From Anolis carolinensis (taxonomy: Eukaryota): a stretch of DNA of 64,000 nt. The notes under the pieces were generated by a model. The model saw only the letters and a list, made by a program, of their open reading frames with translations, did no database searches and was not told the origin of the DNA. The position numbers and the translations under genes were made by a program. The stretch spans positions 108,105,971-108,169,970 of the forward strand of contig NC_085843.1 in assembly GCF_035594765.1 (NCBI RefSeq). Reading direction: 5' to 3'. Below, piece by piece: positions 30,401-37,945 of this stretch. Every line of letters begins with the position of its first letter. Position 1 is the stretch's first letter.

Positions 30401-33400
30401 TAATCTCAAAAACATCAGTATGTTGAATATAAGCTGTACTCTTTTACAGTTCCATAGTCTTTCATAAAAATGATATTATATAAGTGTCAATTTTCCATTT
30501 TCCTCTTCTCTGCCTTCACTGTGTACTTCATGTCTTCCCACATTTCTTATTTATTACTTCTTCTGGACCAAACCTGCTTTCTTTTAAAAGATTAGCCTTA
30601 ATTCCTGCCCCCACTCCAGGTAAATGCAATATTTGTTTCTATATCCATAAACATATATAAAATATCAGTAGCATATTTCTTCTTCATTTCATTTGAGATG
30701 GTAAAGAAGAATTTTATGATCATGATGCTGATCATAACAACAGGAGGCTAAGCAGAGAACCATATGGTGGTTCCCATTAGCAGAAAAATCTCATTTCCGT
30801 CCTTTCCCCCCCTTCCACACAGACAAGAGCATCATTTGATATCGCAACGCCTACATGCCAGCTGCTCATTGTCAGGTATCCCCCAGAGAACTATATCCAC
30901 AAATAGTGTTATTATGACTAAGTGTTCCCTAGGTGTTTCCTCACACCTGTAATAGGCTTGTCCTCAGAGGTATTGCAATTTCAGCATTTGGTATTTAGAA
31001 TGAAACAAAAACATAAGAGTATAACTGTAGTAACTCTGAAGCAGTCCCAGAGCTTAGAAACATTTTTAAAATAGTTTCCAGAATCCCCAGACCTCACACT
31101 CAGGGGGATTCTCAGAGCTTTAATTTAAAAAGTAACTTTCCCCCTCCATGAATTCTCCTTTATCAGCAATGAACACTTCAGTTACTGTTTGTTTACAATT
31201 ACCAATAGACCCAGTTATTTTCCCCAATTGCCTTGAAAACAAATCCATGAAAAGAGGATAGAATGGGTTCCATGAAAGGAGTTTGGCAGACACACTTGTT
31301 CTTCTGAAACATAAGCTCAGTTCTTATCCATCTCACCTTATAGCATCTGTCAGATAGTGCCAGCACAGATAGATGGTTTTGGAGTAGTACATCAAATTAT
31401 GATACTGGGATTTTGGACCTGATTTGGTGAGGTAGAGATTTGATATTTCAGTGTTTCCATAAAAAGCTAAAAAGAAAAAAAGAGAAATCAAAATATTACA
31501 CCATGATGACAGCCCCTGTTACCCACAAAGAATAGATTTAGGACCTCATCATACAAGTCATTTGCCCCAGTTTTCACCCCAGTTGAGCCATGGAGTCCCA
31601 CGCTGCTTATCAAATGACACAGGCTCACTTCCAGTAAGGCTCTCTAGCTAAACTGGGGTACAAGCATCCGACAACACTGCACCGGGAACATGGCAGGCTT
31701 CCTGTGTTCCATTGCAAACCATGGGGCCAGCGCAGGGGGAGGCTGGTGAATCACCCCACGAGACAAGTCAATGTGATGAAGTCCTTAGACAGGTCCTTTG
31801 CCTACCTCAAGACAATTTTTGATAATATCCTCCTGACAGAGATCTGTGCTGAGCCCATTCATACCAAATCCAGTTTCAGAACACCTATTCAGCTGTCAAT
31901 CCTACCAAATTACTAGTTAAGATTGACTTTTTATCATTTCTGGTTACCTTTCTTTCTAGGACATTTTCTGGACACATACCAAACTTATGAAAAATGCTGG
32001 CCTTCACTGAATCCACATTCTCCACCTATGTAAATTTTATACACTTCCATTATGTTCTTCCCTGTGCTTTTTAGTCATTTGGATTGTTCCTTTCTCTATT
32101 CTGCAATATTATTTTTGAAATTTGGTGTCCATTACTCAGTAACCTAAGTGTGGCCACATAAAAAAACGTGTACAAAAATAGTTTTTTCCCAACCCTAACC
32201 CTTCTTAATGTCCCTTGAATAAGGAATTTATCTTTTTCATAGCAGTAACATATGAGATCAAAATTTTCATTGAGTCAACTATTCCAAACTCAAGAATTCC
32301 TTTCCTTGTGAAGTCACCACCAGATGAAAGCCCATCAGGACACATTTGAATTAAGATGAACATTGTACATTAGGGGTGAGCAATGTGATCTGTGCCCATA
32401 TTGTGTTATACCCAGGTCTGCCCGTAGAAAAGAAACATGGTTAAAAAAATTCCAATCAAAAATGGCAGGAAGCCCATTCCTATTCTATTTCTTTTTAAAA
32501 AAGGGAATGGAGTAGATCAGAGGACTTTTATGCCTGCTTTACAAACACGACTGCTTTTCCTGGAGGCCCTCAGAATTATTTTTCTTTTTACCACAAATAA
32601 ATAAATAAATAAAATGCCTCAGCATGAGGATTTAGCATATTTCCCAACTGCTCTGATTTGGTTAATCCTCTGTTGTCCCACTATTTAGCTACTTTTAAAA
32701 TGTACCAGTTGTCTTCCTTCTTCCACTTTATCAGTTTGTCCTCAGCTTACTCTTGACTGCTGCAAACAAAATTCAAAGTGCAAAACTAATTAGCATTCAA
32801 TTAACTAAACATAGGAAAGAAGAGGAATGGTAGTAGAATCTGTCTCTTCCCTGTAAGCTCAGGCAAATGGAAACTGCTGCAGATTTTCCTAACCTGTGTG
32901 TTTTTTTGCTATCTTGCCCACACTGTGATGCTGCTTGACCAAACAAGTCACACTTTTCACCCACGTTCTAGGAGCTCTTCTACACAGCCATATAACTCAG
33001 AATATCAAGGCAGAAATTCCCACATTATCTGAGTGTGGACTCAGGTACCCAGTTCAAAGAAGATATTGTGGGGTTTTCTGCCTTGATATTCTGGGATACA
33101 GGGCTGTGTGGAAGGGCCCTAGGACAATTTGCAACATTTTGATCTAGCACAACCTAGTGAATATAGAGTCCTGATGTGGAACAGTTGATCATATTACCTC
33201 CTTCCTGTTTCATGTCTACTCTCAGAAGCTTCAATCCAACACAAGCATCCAAAAGCCTTTCCATTCCACGAATGCTGCTGCCTAGCCGCTCTGCAATGGT
33301 CTTTGTCGACAGTATCTCCTTTGACTCTCTCAGGAGATCAAAGATTCCCAACTCACAGGCAGTGAACATCACCTAAAGGCAAAGATAGGAACCAGAATTA

Positions 33401-36400
33401 AAGATGCTAACCAGGAGCCCTTCCAGACAGCTCTATATCCCAAAATATCAAGGCAGAAAATCCCACAATATCTGCTTTGAACTAGGTTATCTGAGTCCAC
33501 ACTCAGATAATGTTGGATTTTCTGCCTTGATATTCTGGGATATAGGGCTGTTTGGAAGGGCCCCAGATGGGAGCACACAGTCTTGTGTGATATATGTCCA
33601 CTGGAAAGGCAGACAATGGAACCAGTGCTTACAGAACTGTGATTAAGCTTTACTGTAGCAAAGAGTGTTGCTGGTACATGTTGAGTATATTCCTTAACCA
33701 AATGCTTGAGACCAAAAGTGTTTTTGATTTCTTAATATTTTTATTTCTTTTGGAAAACTTGTACAGTAGAGTCTCACTAATCCAAGCTAAACGGGCCGGC
33801 AGAAGCTTGGATAAGCGAATATCATGGATTATAAGGACTGATCAAGGAAAAGCCTATTAAACATCAAATTAGGTTATGATTTTACAAATTAAGCACCAAA
33901 ACTTCATGTTATACAACAAATTTGACAGAAAAAGTAGTTCAATACACAGTAAGGTTATGTTGTAATCAGGGCCGGCCCCACTATTGAGGCACCTGACGCC
34001 GCCGCCTCGGGCGCAGGCCCGGGGGGGCGCCGTCAGGCTGGGCGGGAGGCGGGGCACCGCCCTGACGGTGCCCCGCCTCCCGCCCAGTGCGCCCTGGCCC
34101 GTCTGGCCTTTTCTAGCAGGCCAGACTTCAGCGGAGGTCCCTGCAGGCCGCAATCGCGGCCTGGAGGGACCTCCGCTGCAGTCTGGCCTGCTAGAAAAGG
34201 CCAGACGGGCGAGCGGGAGTAGCGTGGGAGGCGGAGCCAGCTCTGACGCCGCCCCCCCCCCCCCCGCCCAGCGTGCCTTGGCCCTGCCTCCCACGCAGCG
34301 TGGGAGGCGGGGCCAGGGCACGCTGGGCGGGGGGGGGAGCGGCGTCAGAGCTGGCCCCGCCTCCCACGCTACTCCCGCTCGCCCGTCTGGCCTTTTCTAG
34401 CAGGCCAGACTGCAGCGGAGGTCCCTCCAGGCCGCGATTGCGGCCTGGAGGGACCTCCGCTGAAGTCTGGCCTGCTAGAAAAGACCAGACGGGCGAGCAG
34501 GAGTAGTGTGGGAGGCGGGGCCAGCTCTGGCCCCGCCCCCCCGCCCAGCGTGCCCTGGCCCCGCCTCCCACGTTGCGTGGGAGGCAGGGCCAAGGCACGC
34601 TGGGTGGGGGGGGGGAGCGGCGTCAGAGCTGGCTCCGCCTCCCACGCTACTCCCGCTCGCCCGTCTGGCCTTTTCTAGCAGGCCAGACTTCAGCGGAGGT
34701 CCCTGCAGGCCGCAATCGCGGCCTGCAGGGACCTCCGCTGAAGTCTGGCCTGCTAGAAAAGGCCAGACGGGCGAGCGGGAGTAGCGTGGGAGGCGGGGCC
34801 AGCTCTGGCCCCGCCCCCCCGCCCAGCGTGCCCTGGCCCCGCCTCCCACGTTGCGTGGGAGGCAGGGCCAAGGCACGCTGGGCGGGGGGGGAGTGGCGTC
34901 AGAGCTGGCTCCGCCTCCCACGCTACTCCCGCTCGCCCGTCTGGCCTTTTCTAGCAGGCCAGACTGCAGCGAAGGTCCCTCCAGGCCGCGATTGCGGCCT
35001 GGAGGGACGTCCGCTGCAGTCTGGCCTGTTAGAAAAGGCCAGACGGGCAAGCGGGAGTAGCGTGGGAGGCGGGGCCAACTCTGGCGCCGCCCCCCCCACC
35101 CAGCGTGCCCTGGCCCCGCCTCCCACGCTGCGTGGGAGGCGGGGCCAGGGCACGCTGGGTGGGGGGCGGGGCCAACTCTGGCCCCGCCTCCCTCACTATT
35201 CGCCCTGGCCCCGCCTCCCACGCTGCGTGGGAGGCGGGGCCAGGGCACGCTGGGCGGGGCCAGGGCGCGGGAGGCGGGGCCGGTGGCGGGGGCGCTTTTC
35301 AGCACCCCCGCTTCACATCAAAAAATATCTCCGGCCGGCCCTGGTTGTAATTACTGTATTTATGAATTTAGCACCAAAATATCACGATATATTGGAAACA
35401 TTGACTACAAAAATGGCTTGGATTATCCAGAGGCTTGGATAAGTGAGGCTTGGATTAGTGAGACTCTACTGTATTTGCATATACCTACATAACGGCACTC
35501 CATGCAGTCATGCTGGCCACATGACCTTGGAGGTGTCTACAGACAATGCCGGCTCTTTGGCTTAGAAATGGAGATGAGCACCAACCCCCAAAATTGGACA
35601 TGACTAGATTTAATGTCAGGGGAAAACCTTTACCTTTTACATATGAGATATCTTGGAGATGAATCCAAGTATAAACATTATATTCATTGATGTTACAGAT
35701 ACACCTGGTTATACACAACATCTTTGATAATTGTGTGCATGAAACAAAGTTTGCGTACCCTCAGAAAACAAAAGTGTCACTCTCTCAGGCCAAAGTTTTT
35801 TCAGCATTCTGGATTTCGGCATTCCAGAGAAGAGATGTTCACACTGTATATGATGGTTTAATGTGAAAATCTACATCTCTCTTGCAAACGTTTGGTCTTG
35901 CTCAAAAAAACTCAAACTCCTTAGTATGTTAAAATCACAACTGCAAGCATGATGTCCTCATGATGCTTTCTGAAATAGATACCTCACCCATCACTGCTCC
36001 AGATACTGATAGATTACAGTAATTTCTTAATGTTTATTGATATATGAACTCTGGTTTTAATACATTTAATTAAAAGGTTCACTTCAGTTCGCAATTACTG
36101 GAATTTTTGGAAAGGTTAGATGTGATAGCAAGCTATATAAGCTTCAGTGGAGATACCTATCAATTTCATTTTTTGGCATTTGTATTCCTCTTGTATACTA
36201 GATAGATGTAACAGTATGCCATTTTACGAAGTACTGTCACATTTAAAATATTTAAGAAGAGATTGATCAAGTTATTTATTAGTTTTCTACTATGTTGATA
36301 TTTAAAGAAGTAACATAATGTGCAATTCAAGTGTTGTATTAATACTCCAGCAGACCAGGATTTGAATTCCTGCTCAGTCTTGGAAATGCACTGGATCACC

Positions 36401-37833
36401 TTGGGCAAGTCACACTCTCTCACCCTGAGAAGAAGGCAATGGTAAAAATCAGCTGTTAAGAAATCTTGATAGGAAAATCCTATAAAAGGATGATGATAAA
36501 CCACAGTCAATTTGAAGGGACATAGGAGCCACAATATTTGAATTTAGGAGGTTTCTCAGAGCTGGGAAAAATTATAATTGTTTGATCAGAAATTCCTGAA
36601 TCTTCTGAACAAAATAACTAGCTGGAGGGATTCTGGGTGCTGGAATTTAAAAAACAAAACAAAACAAAAACCAAGATTTCCAAGTTCTGGACATTCCTGG
36701 CTTTCAAGTGAGATTCTAACATTTTTGTATTTTTCTACTGACTGGATATATATTTTAAGGTGCCACATATAGGTGCGTTTTATTTCATACCAGTGAAGAA
36801 TAATTTCATGTATATGAATCAGATCTTTTTTTATGCATTCCTGAAATACTGTAAAGGTGTAAGAGTTCTGTAGCACCTTTGAGACTAGAGAAAAATACAT
36901 TTCTAGCATGAGTTTTCATAGACTGTAGTTCACTTCATCACATAGAATGAATTATCTGTAGATACAGATGTTATTGCTGTTGTGTGCCTTCAAATTTTGA
37001 CTAAGGCAACCTATCGCGGAGTTTTCTGAGTCTAAAAGTGTGTGGCTTGCCCAAGCATATATACCAACAGAGATATACTGGAAGGGAGTCATCCTGGTAC
37101 AGTGGTTGAGCATTGCACTATGACTCTGGAGACCAGGATAGTAGGATTTGAATCTCTGCTCAGCCATGAAATTTGCTGGATGACCATGGGAAAGCCACTC
37201 TCTTTCAGCCTCAGAATAAGGCAATGACAACTCTATTCTGGACAAATATTGCAAAGAAAATCCTGTGATAGGTTTGTCTTACGGTCACTGTAAGTTGGAA
37301 ACAACATAAAGACACACAATAACAACAGAACACCAATATTCTAGAAAGGTAAAGGGCTACTGCTAAACTGGAGACAGTAACAAAACCATTTCAAAGGCAT
37401 ACGCTGCTGAACACTTATGGAATCTTATACTACGTTTAAGCAAAATGCTAGAAACTCCCAAAAATTTGAATTTAAAATTTAAACATGTTTCTTGCCTATA
37501 AGGTTTTTAATTTTGGATTTTGTTTGAGTTAATAGGGATCTTGAACCAGCAGAGATTTTGGATTTCCTAAGGCATGGGCTTAAATTATGTTGATAATGCT
37601 CTTAAATCTAACAATATCCATTGCAACACTTGCTGCCTACATGTTTTTCTATTCATATTAAAGCCATTTCAAAAGGCAGGTTAAAAGGTTCTCCGTTTGC
37701 CAATAATATATAAAGTTTCAACAGAGTAACACAGCCATAATAAAATAAGGTATTACATTACCTTTGATATTAAAAATCCATTCTGGTACTGAATTAGGAT
37801 CTGCAGATATTCAAGGTCTTCCGTGGAGTTCAT
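21255..37833 (-). CDS. ASMT: acetylserotonin O-methyltransferase (HIOMT); join of 37762-37833, 33198-33372, 31337-31466, 28683-28751, 27574-27692, 26257-26397, 23324-23446, 21255-21466 = 1041 nt, 346 aa
   Basis: Dimerisation domain ([21 protein letters not shown]), SAM-binding DLGGGAG, GDFFKD, catalytic ILHDW and C-terminal YDAILGRK. Eight GT-AG exons (72/175/130/69/119/141/123/212 nt) with compatible phases and no internal stop. Syntenic with AKAP17A. Confidence 0.96.
23324..23446 (-). CDS. ASMT: ASMT exon 7 [41 protein letters not shown]
   Basis: Hand translation; ttcaatacag|GG ... CCT G|gtatgt. Confidence 0.94.
23826..24458 (+). mobile_element. hAT/Charlie-group (OC1-like) non-autonomous element, right TIR lost
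   Basis: CAGGGGTCCCCGAACTATGGCCCGCGGGCCACATGCGGCCC start; AACTATAGTCTGGCCCTCCAATGGTCTGAGGGACAGTGAAC subterminal end. Confidence 0.65.
24708..26019. mobile_element. 1.3-kb non-autonomous Tc1/mariner-type element, copy 1 (ASMT intron 6)
   Basis: TA|CCATATATACTCAAAGATAAGCC...GGCTTATACTCGAGTATATATAG|TA; collinear with 48229-49421. Confidence 0.82.
26257..26397 (-). CDS. ASMT: ASMT exon 6 [47 protein letters not shown]
   Basis: Hand translation; ttttctctgaaaag|GA ... GAA G|gtaaat. Confidence 0.92.
26447..26597. other. assembly gap (151 N) in ASMT intron 5
   Basis: Run of N. Confidence 0.99.
27054..27187. mobile_element. palindromic hAT MITE
   Basis: CAGTGGTTCCCAACCTG...CAGGTTGAGAACCACTG, nearly fully self-complementary. 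Confidence 0.75.
27574..27692 (-). CDS. ASMT: ASMT exon 5 [39 protein letters not shown]
   Basis: Within ORF 27464..27718; tctgtag|G ... GGA G|gtaagc. Confidence 0.93.
28683..28751 (-). CDS. ASMT: ASMT exon 4 [23 protein letters not shown]
   Basis: Hand translation; tttcttaag|G ... TAC AG|gtaagt. Confidence 0.92.
29195..30400 (-). mobile_element. degenerate L2 LINE in ASMT intron 3
   Basis: [20 protein letters not shown] and L2-type 3' end. Confidence 0.72.
31337..31466 (-). CDS. ASMT: ASMT exon 3 (A)[43 protein letters not shown]
   Basis: Hand translation; ttctttttag|CT ... ATA AG|gtgaga. Confidence 0.92.
31541..31784. mobile_element. Harbinger-type non-autonomous element (different family; another candidate at ~21829-22076)
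   Basis: GGACCTCATCATA...TGTGATGAAGTCC termini with TTA TSD. Confidence 0.6.
32972..33119. mobile_element. PIF/Harbinger-type palindromic MITE
   Basis: G(A/G)GC(C/T)CTTC(C/T)ACACAGCC TIRs, 3-bp TSD TAG. Confidence 0.8.
33198..33372 (-). CDS. ASMT: ASMT exon 2 [14 protein letters not shown]...DMKQEG
   Basis: ORF 33154..33372; tgcctttag|GTG ... GGA G|gtaata. Confidence 0.94.
33415..33563. mobile_element. PIF/Harbinger-type palindromic MITE
   Basis: Same family, 3-bp TSD CAG. Confidence 0.8.
33764..35471. mobile_element. Tc1/mariner-superfamily MITE (~320 bp) split by the hAT insertion
   Basis: 24-bp TIR CAGTAGAGTCTCACTAATCCAAGC, TA TSD both sides; uninterrupted relative at 46232-46554. Confidence 0.88.
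33967..35343. mobile_element. non-autonomous hAT-type DNA transposon with GC-rich multi-palindromic interior
   Basis: TIR CAGGGCCGGCC...GGCCGGCCCTG; 8-bp TSD GTTGTAAT (33959-33966, 35344-35351); single GTTGTAAT at the empty paralogous site 46427-46434. Confidence 0.88.
35492..35637 (+). mobile_element. Sauria-type SINE, 3' part
   Basis: CCATGCAGTCATGCTGGCCACATGACCTTGGAGG core, ACCTTT tail, TACATA flanking duplication; matches copies at 58.1 and 60.4 kb. Confidence 0.75.
37085..37328 (+). mobile_element. old MIR-like/tRNA SINE with (ACA)n tail; relatives at ~36340-36530, 39320-39495 (+) and 17990-18210, 50540-50750, 62155-62345 (-)
   Basis: Shared TTGAATC...CTCAGCC...CTTGGGCAAGTCAC-like head and GAAAATCCTGTGATAGG body. 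Confidence 0.55.
37762..37833 (-). CDS. ASMT: ASMT exon 1 [24 protein letters not shown]
   Basis: Hand translation; AAAA ATG; TCA AAG|gtaatg. Confidence 0.9.
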
Positions 37834-37849
37834 TTTTCTGCAGCGATCT

Positions 37850-37945
37850 GTGAAAAATCCTCTTTCCCTCTTCATTTAAATAAGCCTCTTTTGCTTGCGG
37901 GCATAGATCATTCTGCGTAGTCCAATTTAACTAGACTAATGCCAT
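37850..37945 (-). promoter_or_regulatory. putative ASMT proximal promoter
   Basis: TATTTAAA TATA-like box at 37875-37882 (~42 nt upstream of ATG); overlapping TAAGCC (CRX/OTX2-type) 37881-37886; reverse-oriented CCAAT 37922-37926. Confidence 0.5.

What the first reader, a model, noticed from the sequence alone, without database searches (positions are those of the whole stretch)
33967..35343. hAT-type element whose body is an alternating-orientation concatemer with flip/flop hairpin loops
SEEN: a 1377-bp, very GC- and CpG-rich insert in AT-rich ASMT intron 1, with perfect 11-bp TIRs and an 8-bp TSD. Its interior is one ~140-bp unit repeated head-to-head and tail-to-tail, so symmetry axes recur every ~140 bp. 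Type-A axes lie at ~34154, 34438, 34716 and 34992; type-B axes at ~34297, 34574, 34852, 35129 and (shortened) 35224. The asymmetric A loop alternates strictly between GCAATCGC and its reverse complement GCGATTGC. B loops read GCAGC, GTTGC, GTTGC, GCTGC, GCTGC. Diagnostic variants (GACTTCAG/GACTGCAG, CCTGCAGG/CCTCCAGG) are shuffled between arms. A separate perfect 22-bp stem sits at 34038-34087. KNOWN: 8-bp TSD plus short CAG-starting TIR is the hAT signature. Flip/flop loops in alternating concatemers are the hallmark of hairpin-primed (rolling-hairpin) synthesis, as in parvoviruses. INFERENCE: the interior grew by repeated fold-back priming or template switching, for example during gap repair after excision, rather than by ordinary unequal crossing-over. 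It may represent a family of self-expanding fold-back transposons.
Basis: partly seen in the sequence, partly recalled or inferred. Interest (0 to 1): 0.8.

Follow-up and report, generated by a model that had tools for sequence, protein, structure and literature searches.

The report
Palindrome-array hAT transposon in anole intron
A 1.4-kb non-coding cut-and-paste (hAT) transposon of an abundant green-anole family carries a GC-rich array of DNA hairpins; the structure is real, but known repeat-copying errors explain it without virus-like rolling-hairpin growth.

Summary
Window 33967-35343 is a 1377-bp insert with a perfect 11-bp TIR and an 8-bp duplication (GTTGTAAT). Its GC is 74% against 39% in the flanks.

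Uninterrupted copies of the hyper-abundant repeat it landed in show the empty site, which fixes both boundaries. TIR and target site match the published orphan anole families hAT-N6/N7/N8_AC, bar one TIR base. Interior words are multi-copy in three individuals and in a second organism. This scan noted the same kind of element at least four times elsewhere in this genome.

The rolling-hairpin reading is only partly supported. Arm markers are mosaic:
- Markers near the B axes repeat in direct orientation every 278 bp.
- Markers around the A axes alternate, giving a 556-bp period.
- No axis shows the long mirror identity that fold-back doubling predicts.
- Strict alternation of four loops has a 1-in-8 chance under free flipping.

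Exchange between inverted arms is nevertheless required. Template switching at quasi-palindromes, which homogenises arms and inverts spacers, explains it when added to direct tandem amplification. I could not obtain other copies or long reads, so the mechanism stays inferred. It is a new member of a known kind, of modest interest.

The parts
33959..33966 (.). left copy of the 8-bp target-site duplication GTTGTAAT
   Evidence: paralogous empty sites hold one copy only (joint 33958->35344 with 8 letters fitting both sides)
33967..33977 (+). left terminal inverted repeat CAGGGCCGGCC
   Evidence: one mismatch to the published CAGAGSCGGYCC
33978..34096 (.). left subterminal region, including a perfect 22-bp stem with a 6-nt loop at 34038-34087 and a diverged B-like arm
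34097..35166 (.). tandem array, period 278 bp, 3.8 copies; each unit holds one A and one B palindrome
   Evidence: TRF; D1, I1-I9; axes
34607..34824 (.). A3 palindrome, the most perfect: uninterrupted pairing for about 80 bp on each side of a 4-nt loop, then arms of different type
   Evidence: (I7, 95%)
34250..34344 (.). B1 palindrome, whose asymmetric markers are flipped relative to B2 and B3
   Evidence: (I21)
35167..35332 (.). right subterminal region: a truncated, diverged unit with B5 palindrome (axis 35224), 95-bp and 20-bp sub-repeats and a small hairpin
35333..35343 (-). right terminal inverted repeat
35344..35351 (.). right copy of the target-site duplication
33796..33966 (.). left half of the hyper-abundant host repeat that the element interrupted
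   Evidence: summed word depth 1e6-1e7 against about 50 for single-copy DNA; loose ends at 33966 read on into 35352 onward
35344..35667 (.). right half of the interrupted host repeat
33157..33372 (-). exon of an ASMT-like O-methyltransferase gene (dimerisation domain), downstream of the element in gene orientation
   Evidence: PF08100, E = 5e-19

Best explanation
This is a non-autonomous hAT transposon. It belongs to, or sits next to, the anole orphan group with CAGRGSCGGYCC ends (hAT-N6/N7/N8_AC). A transposase not yet identified moves it in trans, and it inserted into a copy of a very abundant repeat in intron 1 of an ASMT-like gene. Its cargo is a CpG-rich tandem array of a 278-bp unit made of two quasi-palindromes (A and B). 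Two ordinary copying errors most likely shaped the array. The first is out-of-register direct re-annealing, by slippage, unequal exchange or strand-annealing gap repair, which adds or removes 278-bp units. The second is short-range template switching or recombination between the inverted arms, which makes arms alike and inverts the central spacer. Together they give direct periodicity on the B sides, alternating A cores and shuffled variants. Shown: the anatomy, the boundaries, the multi-copy status and the mosaic pattern. Inferred: the mechanisms and their timing, most of it probably before this insertion.
For: - TSD, TIR and empty site.
- Match to the published family features, TIR CAGAGSCGGYCC and TSD NTTRYAAN.
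- Interior word depth is 1e3-1e5 against about 50 for single-copy DNA, in three individuals and a second organism.
- Direct relation of units: UB2/UB3 11 mismatches direct against 20 inverted; UA2-UA4 direct below inverted.
- Two markers (c98 and the CT indel) separate odd from even arms in units 2-4.
- Inverted exchange is needed: 8 of 11 informative characters have the minority state in both orientations, and 32 of 55 character pairs fail the four-gamete test.
- A3 arms are identical for about 80 bp and then differ, which looks like a conversion tract.
- Two adjacent changes in arms h4 and h6 perfect an inner 18-nt palindrome.
- Template switching between inverted-repeat arms is documented to homogenise arms and reversibly invert spacers (PMC8604942). 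It is frequent during break repair (bioRxiv 10.1101/2023.08.09.552703).
- Edge units are the most diverged and central units the most alike.
Against: - Only one copy could be read, so the order and mechanism of events rest on about 11 informative characters in 8-9 arms.
- A-core markers fit a 556-bp period (9/12) and anti-correlate at 278 bp (2/18). Simple direct 278-bp expansion does not predict this.
- Unit 1 is best matched in inverted orientation. At least one larger inverted event occurred, and fold-back synthesis could also have produced it.
- The TIR differs by one base from the published consensus, and the Repbase consensus could not be compared.
Confidence: 0.6

Rival explanations
1. 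The array was built by iterated hairpin-primed (rolling-hairpin-like) fold-back synthesis. Each round copies the whole existing array in inverted orientation, for example during gap repair after excision.
For: - A loops alternate strictly, and the three A-core markers on the left arms alternate with them.
- Working it through by hand, two rounds of doubling predict alternating loops at one axis type and an x', x, x pattern at the other. The B centres A, T, T fit that.
- Unit 1 matches units 2-3 better in inverted orientation.
Against: - Doubling predicts near-identity of arms mirrored about the last fold-back axis. Mirror matches are 18/36 about B2 and lower about A3 and B3, no better than direct lags.
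- B2 and B3 are asymmetric palindromes sharing the same polarity, so they are direct copies.
- B1, B2 and B3 arms differ at several sites within 25 bp of their axes, unlike fresh fold-backs.
- B4 does not fit the predicted terminal loop state.
- Four loops alternate by chance 1 time in 8.
Confidence: 0.17
2. The mosaic does not come from events inside this element. It comes from ectopic gene conversion or recombination with the hundreds of paralogous copies, so that arms of different subfamilies were pasted together.
For: - The family is highly multi-copy.
- At mirror positions 34118 and 34189 the bulk of family contigs carry the other letter, and about half do at 34402. Subfamilies differing at arm positions therefore exist.
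- Many four-gamete failures.
Against: - All eight arms of this copy share the minor state at the 34118-type position (h8 has a further private change two bases away). This points to exchange within the element or its lineage.
- Conversion tracts coincide with palindrome axes.
- No paralogous sequence could be read to test donor tracts.
Confidence: 0.13
3. The multi-unit array is an assembly artefact, and the true locus holds fewer units.
For: - No contig of the four runs spans the element, because short-read contigs break in it.
- Long palindromes are hard to assemble.
Against: - Each unit carries private single-base differences (columns 22, 49, 63, 67, 75, 92 and 103) and different poly-C lengths. 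Spurious duplication would not create these.
- Earlier notes of this scan report comparable arrays at other loci; I did not check them.
Confidence: 0.05

Closest known systems
hAT-N6_AC, hAT-N7_AC and hAT-N8_AC, orphan non-autonomous hAT families of Anolis carolinensis (Novick et al. 2011, PMC3014272)
   Same: - 8-bp TSD; this copy's GTTGTAAT fits the N6 consensus NTTRYAAN at every position.
- The 12-bp TIR CAGAGSCGGYCC matches 11 of 12 bases at the left end.
- Young and abundant, with no known autonomous partner.
   Different: - Position 4 of the TIR is G, not A.
- Length is 1377 bp against 810, 288 and 329 bp. The excess over N6 is 567 bp, close to two 278-bp units, but I could not obtain the consensus to test this.
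- The paper does not mention palindromes or internal arrays (no occurrence of the word).
Quasi-palindrome template switching (Ripley model; arm homogenisation and spacer inversion, PMC8604942)
   Same: - Loops occur in both orientations.
- Arm mismatches are resolved to symmetric states.
- Clustered changes perfect an inner palindrome.
   Different: The documented cases are single short inverted repeats, mostly in yeast and bacteria. Here, arms of about 140 bp are arrayed in tandem inside a vertebrate transposon, and no event was observed directly.
Parvovirus rolling-hairpin replication with flip/flop termini (own knowledge)
   Same: Palindromes with asymmetric centres are found in both orientations, in head-to-head and tail-to-tail geometry.
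   Different: There is no replication initiator, no nicking site and no evidence of linear replicative intermediates. The marker pattern lacks the mirror identity of concatemers made that way. This is a resemblance of pattern only.
Foldback-type elements and Galileo, with long inverted ends built of expandable tandem repeats (own knowledge, not checked here)
   Same: Cut-and-paste elements whose non-coding parts are structurally dynamic repeat arrays that form hairpins.
   Different: In those elements the arrays are the terminal inverted repeats themselves. Here the TIR is only 11 bp and the array is internal cargo, and the superfamily signature is hAT.

Membership tests
hAT superfamily (non-autonomous member) | 8-bp target-site duplication | tested here: met
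   GTTGTAAT lies on both sides. Paralogous uninterrupted host repeats hold it once.
hAT superfamily (non-autonomous member) | target preference nTnnnnAn (Ac/Hermes type; PMC10368747) | tested here: met
   T at position 2 and A at position 7 of the single TSD. One site only, so weak on its own.
hAT superfamily (non-autonomous member) | short TIRs beginning YARNG | tested here: met
   CAGGG start, 11 bp perfect. The YARNG rule is from my own knowledge.
hAT superfamily (non-autonomous member) | mobilised by a hAT (DDE/BED) transposase | not testable with these tools
   There is no second copy or transposase with these ends in the window. Novick et al. found no autonomous partner.
hAT-N6/N7/N8_AC group | TIR CAGAGSCGGYCC and TSD NTTRYAAN | tested here: inconclusive
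   The TSD fits fully. The TIR fits 11 of 12 bases on the left and 10 of 12 on the right.
hAT-N6/N7/N8_AC group | internal sequence homologous to the family consensus | not testable with these tools
   No consensus is held: the paper has no supplement on file, and Repbase and Dfam are not available.
Rolling-hairpin concatemer | arms mirrored about the latest fold-back axis are the most similar pairs | tested here: not met
   Mirror matches are 0.32-0.64 and no better than direct lags. The closest pair of full units, UB2 and UB3, is related in direct orientation.
Rolling-hairpin concatemer | flip/flop of asymmetric loops at both axis types in the predicted order | tested here: inconclusive
   A loops alternate. 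B centres A, T, T fit, but B4 does not. There are only four and five loops.
Rfam RNA families (miRNA precursors and others) | score at or above the gathering threshold | tested here: not met
   The best hit scores 85 bits against a threshold of 124. Hits fall on both strands at every palindrome, so they are generic hairpin matches.

The most novel reading that the evidence does not exclude
The family may be a natural recorder of hairpin-mediated template switching in the vertebrate germ line. Each transposition-coupled gap repair could add, delete, flip or homogenise palindromic units. Sister copies would then differ in unit number and loop orientation far more than in base substitutions. Arrays rich in a repeated GC motif might also be favoured because they recruit the unknown transposase.
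Probability: 0.18. Interest if true: 0.6.

Novelty: new member of a known kind. Interest (0 to 1): 0.3.

Why it matters
If copy-to-copy comparison showed that unit number and loop orientation change faster than point mutations, this abundant young family would give hundreds of natural replicates. They could be used to measure fold-back and template-switch errors during break repair in a vertebrate germ line. It would also explain how non-autonomous hAT elements gain long structured interiors. As it stands, this copy is one more insertion of that family in an intron. Its 125 CpGs meet the usual CpG-island criteria by composition. That could matter for regulation of the ASMT-like gene, but I did not test it.

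Tried and rejected
- **Other copies in the window.** BLAST of the element against the window and TIR pattern searches found none.
- **Other copies in public collections.** Exact-pattern scans of metagenome, prokaryote genome and viral contigs with a terminal and an internal pattern found nothing. That was expected, since those collections hold no lizard DNA.
- **Earlier-findings look-ups.** Searches by place and by sequence gave nothing. Searches by words gave sibling notes but no sequences.
- **Presence or absence of this insertion in other individuals.** All available runs were short-read contigs that break in the repeat-rich flanks, so it cannot be told. Depths there are sums over contigs, so I did not use them as copy numbers.
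- **Independent CpG decay as the sole cause of the two A-loop states.** Both states are one CpG transition from the perfect palindrome GCGATCGC. But all four palindromes being singly mutated and alternating has probability at most about 0.008, even with a hypermutable loop. I rejected it in favour of one mutation plus flips or duplication.
- **A single 556-bp direct duplication as the whole story.** It fits the A cores (9/12) but not the B sides (14/29).
- **Pure direct 278-bp duplication.** Rejected because minority states occur in both arm orientations.
- **Coding capacity.** The long ORFs are by-products of GC richness and have no Pfam match.
- **Structured RNA.** Only sub-threshold hairpin hits.
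- **The published family consensus.** No supplement is held for Novick et al., and no other paper holds these TIR strings.

Full report
**What is there**

The stretch 33967-35343 is a sharply bounded 1377-bp block. Its GC is 74% and its CpG observed/expected is 0.66, with 125 CpGs. The rest of the window has 39% GC and CpG o/e 0.20. It starts CAGGGCCGGCC and ends with the exact reverse complement. The similarity stops after 11 bp. GTTGTAAT flanks it on both sides. No second copy and no second TIR lies in the window.

**The boundaries**

The flanks 33796-33966 and 35344-35667 belong to one hyper-abundant repeat. Its summed word depth is 1e6-1e7, against about 50 for single-copy DNA in the best run.

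Many contigs from other copies of that repeat run straight across the insertion point. Joints 33958->35344 occur in all four runs, with 8 letters that fit both sides. Loose ends at 33966 and 35344 continue into the opposite flank. So the uninterrupted target holds one GTTGTAAT, and the element is a true insertion with an 8-bp duplication.

The same call shows that interior words are far above single-copy depth, at 7e3-1.2e5. This holds in three individuals of organism A and in a second organism label, so the interior belongs to a multi-copy family. Earlier notes of this scan, which name the genome as green anole, list at least four similar palindrome-array hAT elements elsewhere in it. I treated these as leads only. 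Whether this particular insertion is polymorphic could not be seen, because short-read contigs break in the flanks.

**Family**

Novick et al. [quoted passage not shown] Their TIR is CAGAGSCGGYCC, and hAT-N6 has the TSD consensus NTTRYAAN. Divergence is 0.6-2.4%, copies number about a thousand, and no autonomous partner is known.

The TSD here fits that consensus at all eight positions, and the left TIR differs at one base. The TSD also fits the Hermes/Ac-type nTnnnnAn preference (PMC10368747). The paper says nothing about palindromes. No other paper in the library holds these TIR strings.

**Gene context**

Open frames on the minus strand at 33157-33372 and 23319-23474 match the O-methyltransferase dimerisation and catalytic domains, with E about 1e-18. 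A putative first exon lies at 37756-37875 (no Pfam hit).

**Anatomy of the interior**

TRF finds a 278-bp period with 3.8 copies and 92% matches at 34097-35166, plus a 95-bp sub-repeat at the right edge. The loops and the 22-bp stem read as stated. A two-unit piece folds as single-stranded DNA at -382 kcal/mol, 43 standard deviations below shuffles. The interior has no Pfam-matching ORF. Its only Rfam hits are sub-threshold and hairpin-like, on both strands.

**Testing the growth model**

A tandem array of a unit made of two palindromes has the same geometry as an alternating concatemer of half-units. Only asymmetric markers can separate the two. I cut the array at its axes into arms h1-h9, turned them all to the same orientation and aligned them. 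This gave 11 informative characters.

- **Markers near the B axes follow direct 278-bp periodicity.** Column 98 and a CT indel separate odd from even arms in units 2-4. B2 and B3 are asymmetric palindromes with the same polarity. As whole units, UB2 and UB3 differ by 11 mismatches in direct orientation and 20 in inverted orientation.
- **Markers around the A axes do the opposite.** They match at 278 bp in only 2 of 18 comparisons and at 556 bp in 9 of 12. The left arms read TCA, CGC, TCA, CGC.
- **Unit 1 is best matched in inverted orientation** (UB1 against UB3: 8 mismatches inverted, 13 direct).
- **The characters are mosaic.** Of 55 character pairs, 32 fail the four-gamete test. Eight of the 11 characters have their minority state in both orientation classes.

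Pure direct duplication is therefore excluded, and information has moved between inverted arms. Fold-back doubling is not supported either. Arms mirrored about B2, A3 or B3 match no better than arms at direct lags. The B palindromes are asymmetric within 25 bp of their axes. B loops do not alternate. Under free flipping, four loops alternate by chance one time in eight.

**Local signatures**

- Both A-loop states are one CpG transition from the perfect palindrome GCGATCGC. Independent decay is unlikely to give four singly mutated, alternating loops, by my estimate at most 0.008. One mutation followed by flips or duplication is more economical.
- A3 pairs without interruption for about 80 bp beyond its loop. 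Its arms then switch to different types, which looks like a conversion tract.
- In A2, A3 and A4 it is always the right arm that has taken the left arm's state at the stem sites, while the loop site stays asymmetric. This is the expected result if a nascent strand folds back and copies its own left arm.
- In arms h4 and h6, two nearby changes turn an imperfect inner repeat into a perfect 18-nt palindrome.

These are the documented outcomes of template switching between inverted-repeat arms: arm homogenisation and reversible spacer inversion (PMC8604942). Such switching is strongly stimulated during break repair (bioRxiv 10.1101/2023.08.09.552703). It is not reasonable for the growth of the array as a whole.

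**Timing**

Units differ from one another by 4-7%. The edge units (the left B-like arm and the truncated right unit) are the most diverged, which is the usual profile of an array homogenised in its middle. The TSD and TIR are perfect, and related families are under 2.5% diverged. By inference, the array was largely in place in the source copy before it landed here. Growth at this locus is therefore unlikely.

**Verdict**

The rolling-hairpin growth model is not supported, although exchange between inverted arms is real. The element is a further member of a published, abundant, young kind whose hairpin-array interior has not been described in the papers I could search. Other genomic copies, the Repbase consensus and spanning long reads were out of reach, so the mechanism remains an inference from one copy.

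Noticed in passing
window 33796-33966 and 35344-35667: The element is nested in a hyper-abundant repeat, with summed contig word depth 1e6-1e7 in every run. It contains a 15-bp tandem motif (2.2 copies) at 35430-35462. Its uninterrupted paralogues served as empty sites. I did not identify the repeat family.
   Followed up: partly
window 37756-37875, 33157-33372, 23319-23474 (minus strand): These are exons of an ASMT-like O-methyltransferase gene. The dimerisation domain (PF08100) and the catalytic domain (PF00891) are both recognised. The first listed piece begins with a methionine but has no Pfam hit of its own.
   Followed up: partly
window 34118, 34189, 34402: At mirror-image positions in the arms, most family contigs in all four runs carry the other letter (about half at 34402). 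The arms of this copy carry the minor state instead. This points to subfamilies, with spread of a variant to arms of both orientations within a lineage.
   Followed up: no
window 33967-35343: By composition the insert meets the usual CpG-island criteria: 1.4 kb, GC 74%, CpG o/e 0.66. It carries the core GGGAGGCGG 9 times on each strand and its longer form GAGGCGGGGCC 13 times in all. It sits in the first intron of a gene. Promoter or methylation effects were not tested.
   Followed up: no
window 32932-33219 and 33364-33795: Further very high-copy repeats lie just upstream of the host repeat. Contigs from other genomic copies show many joints that skip 336-457 bp between about 33004-33120 and 33447-33463.
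   Followed up: no
window 26447-26597: A run of 151 N, either an assembly gap or masked.
   Followed up: no
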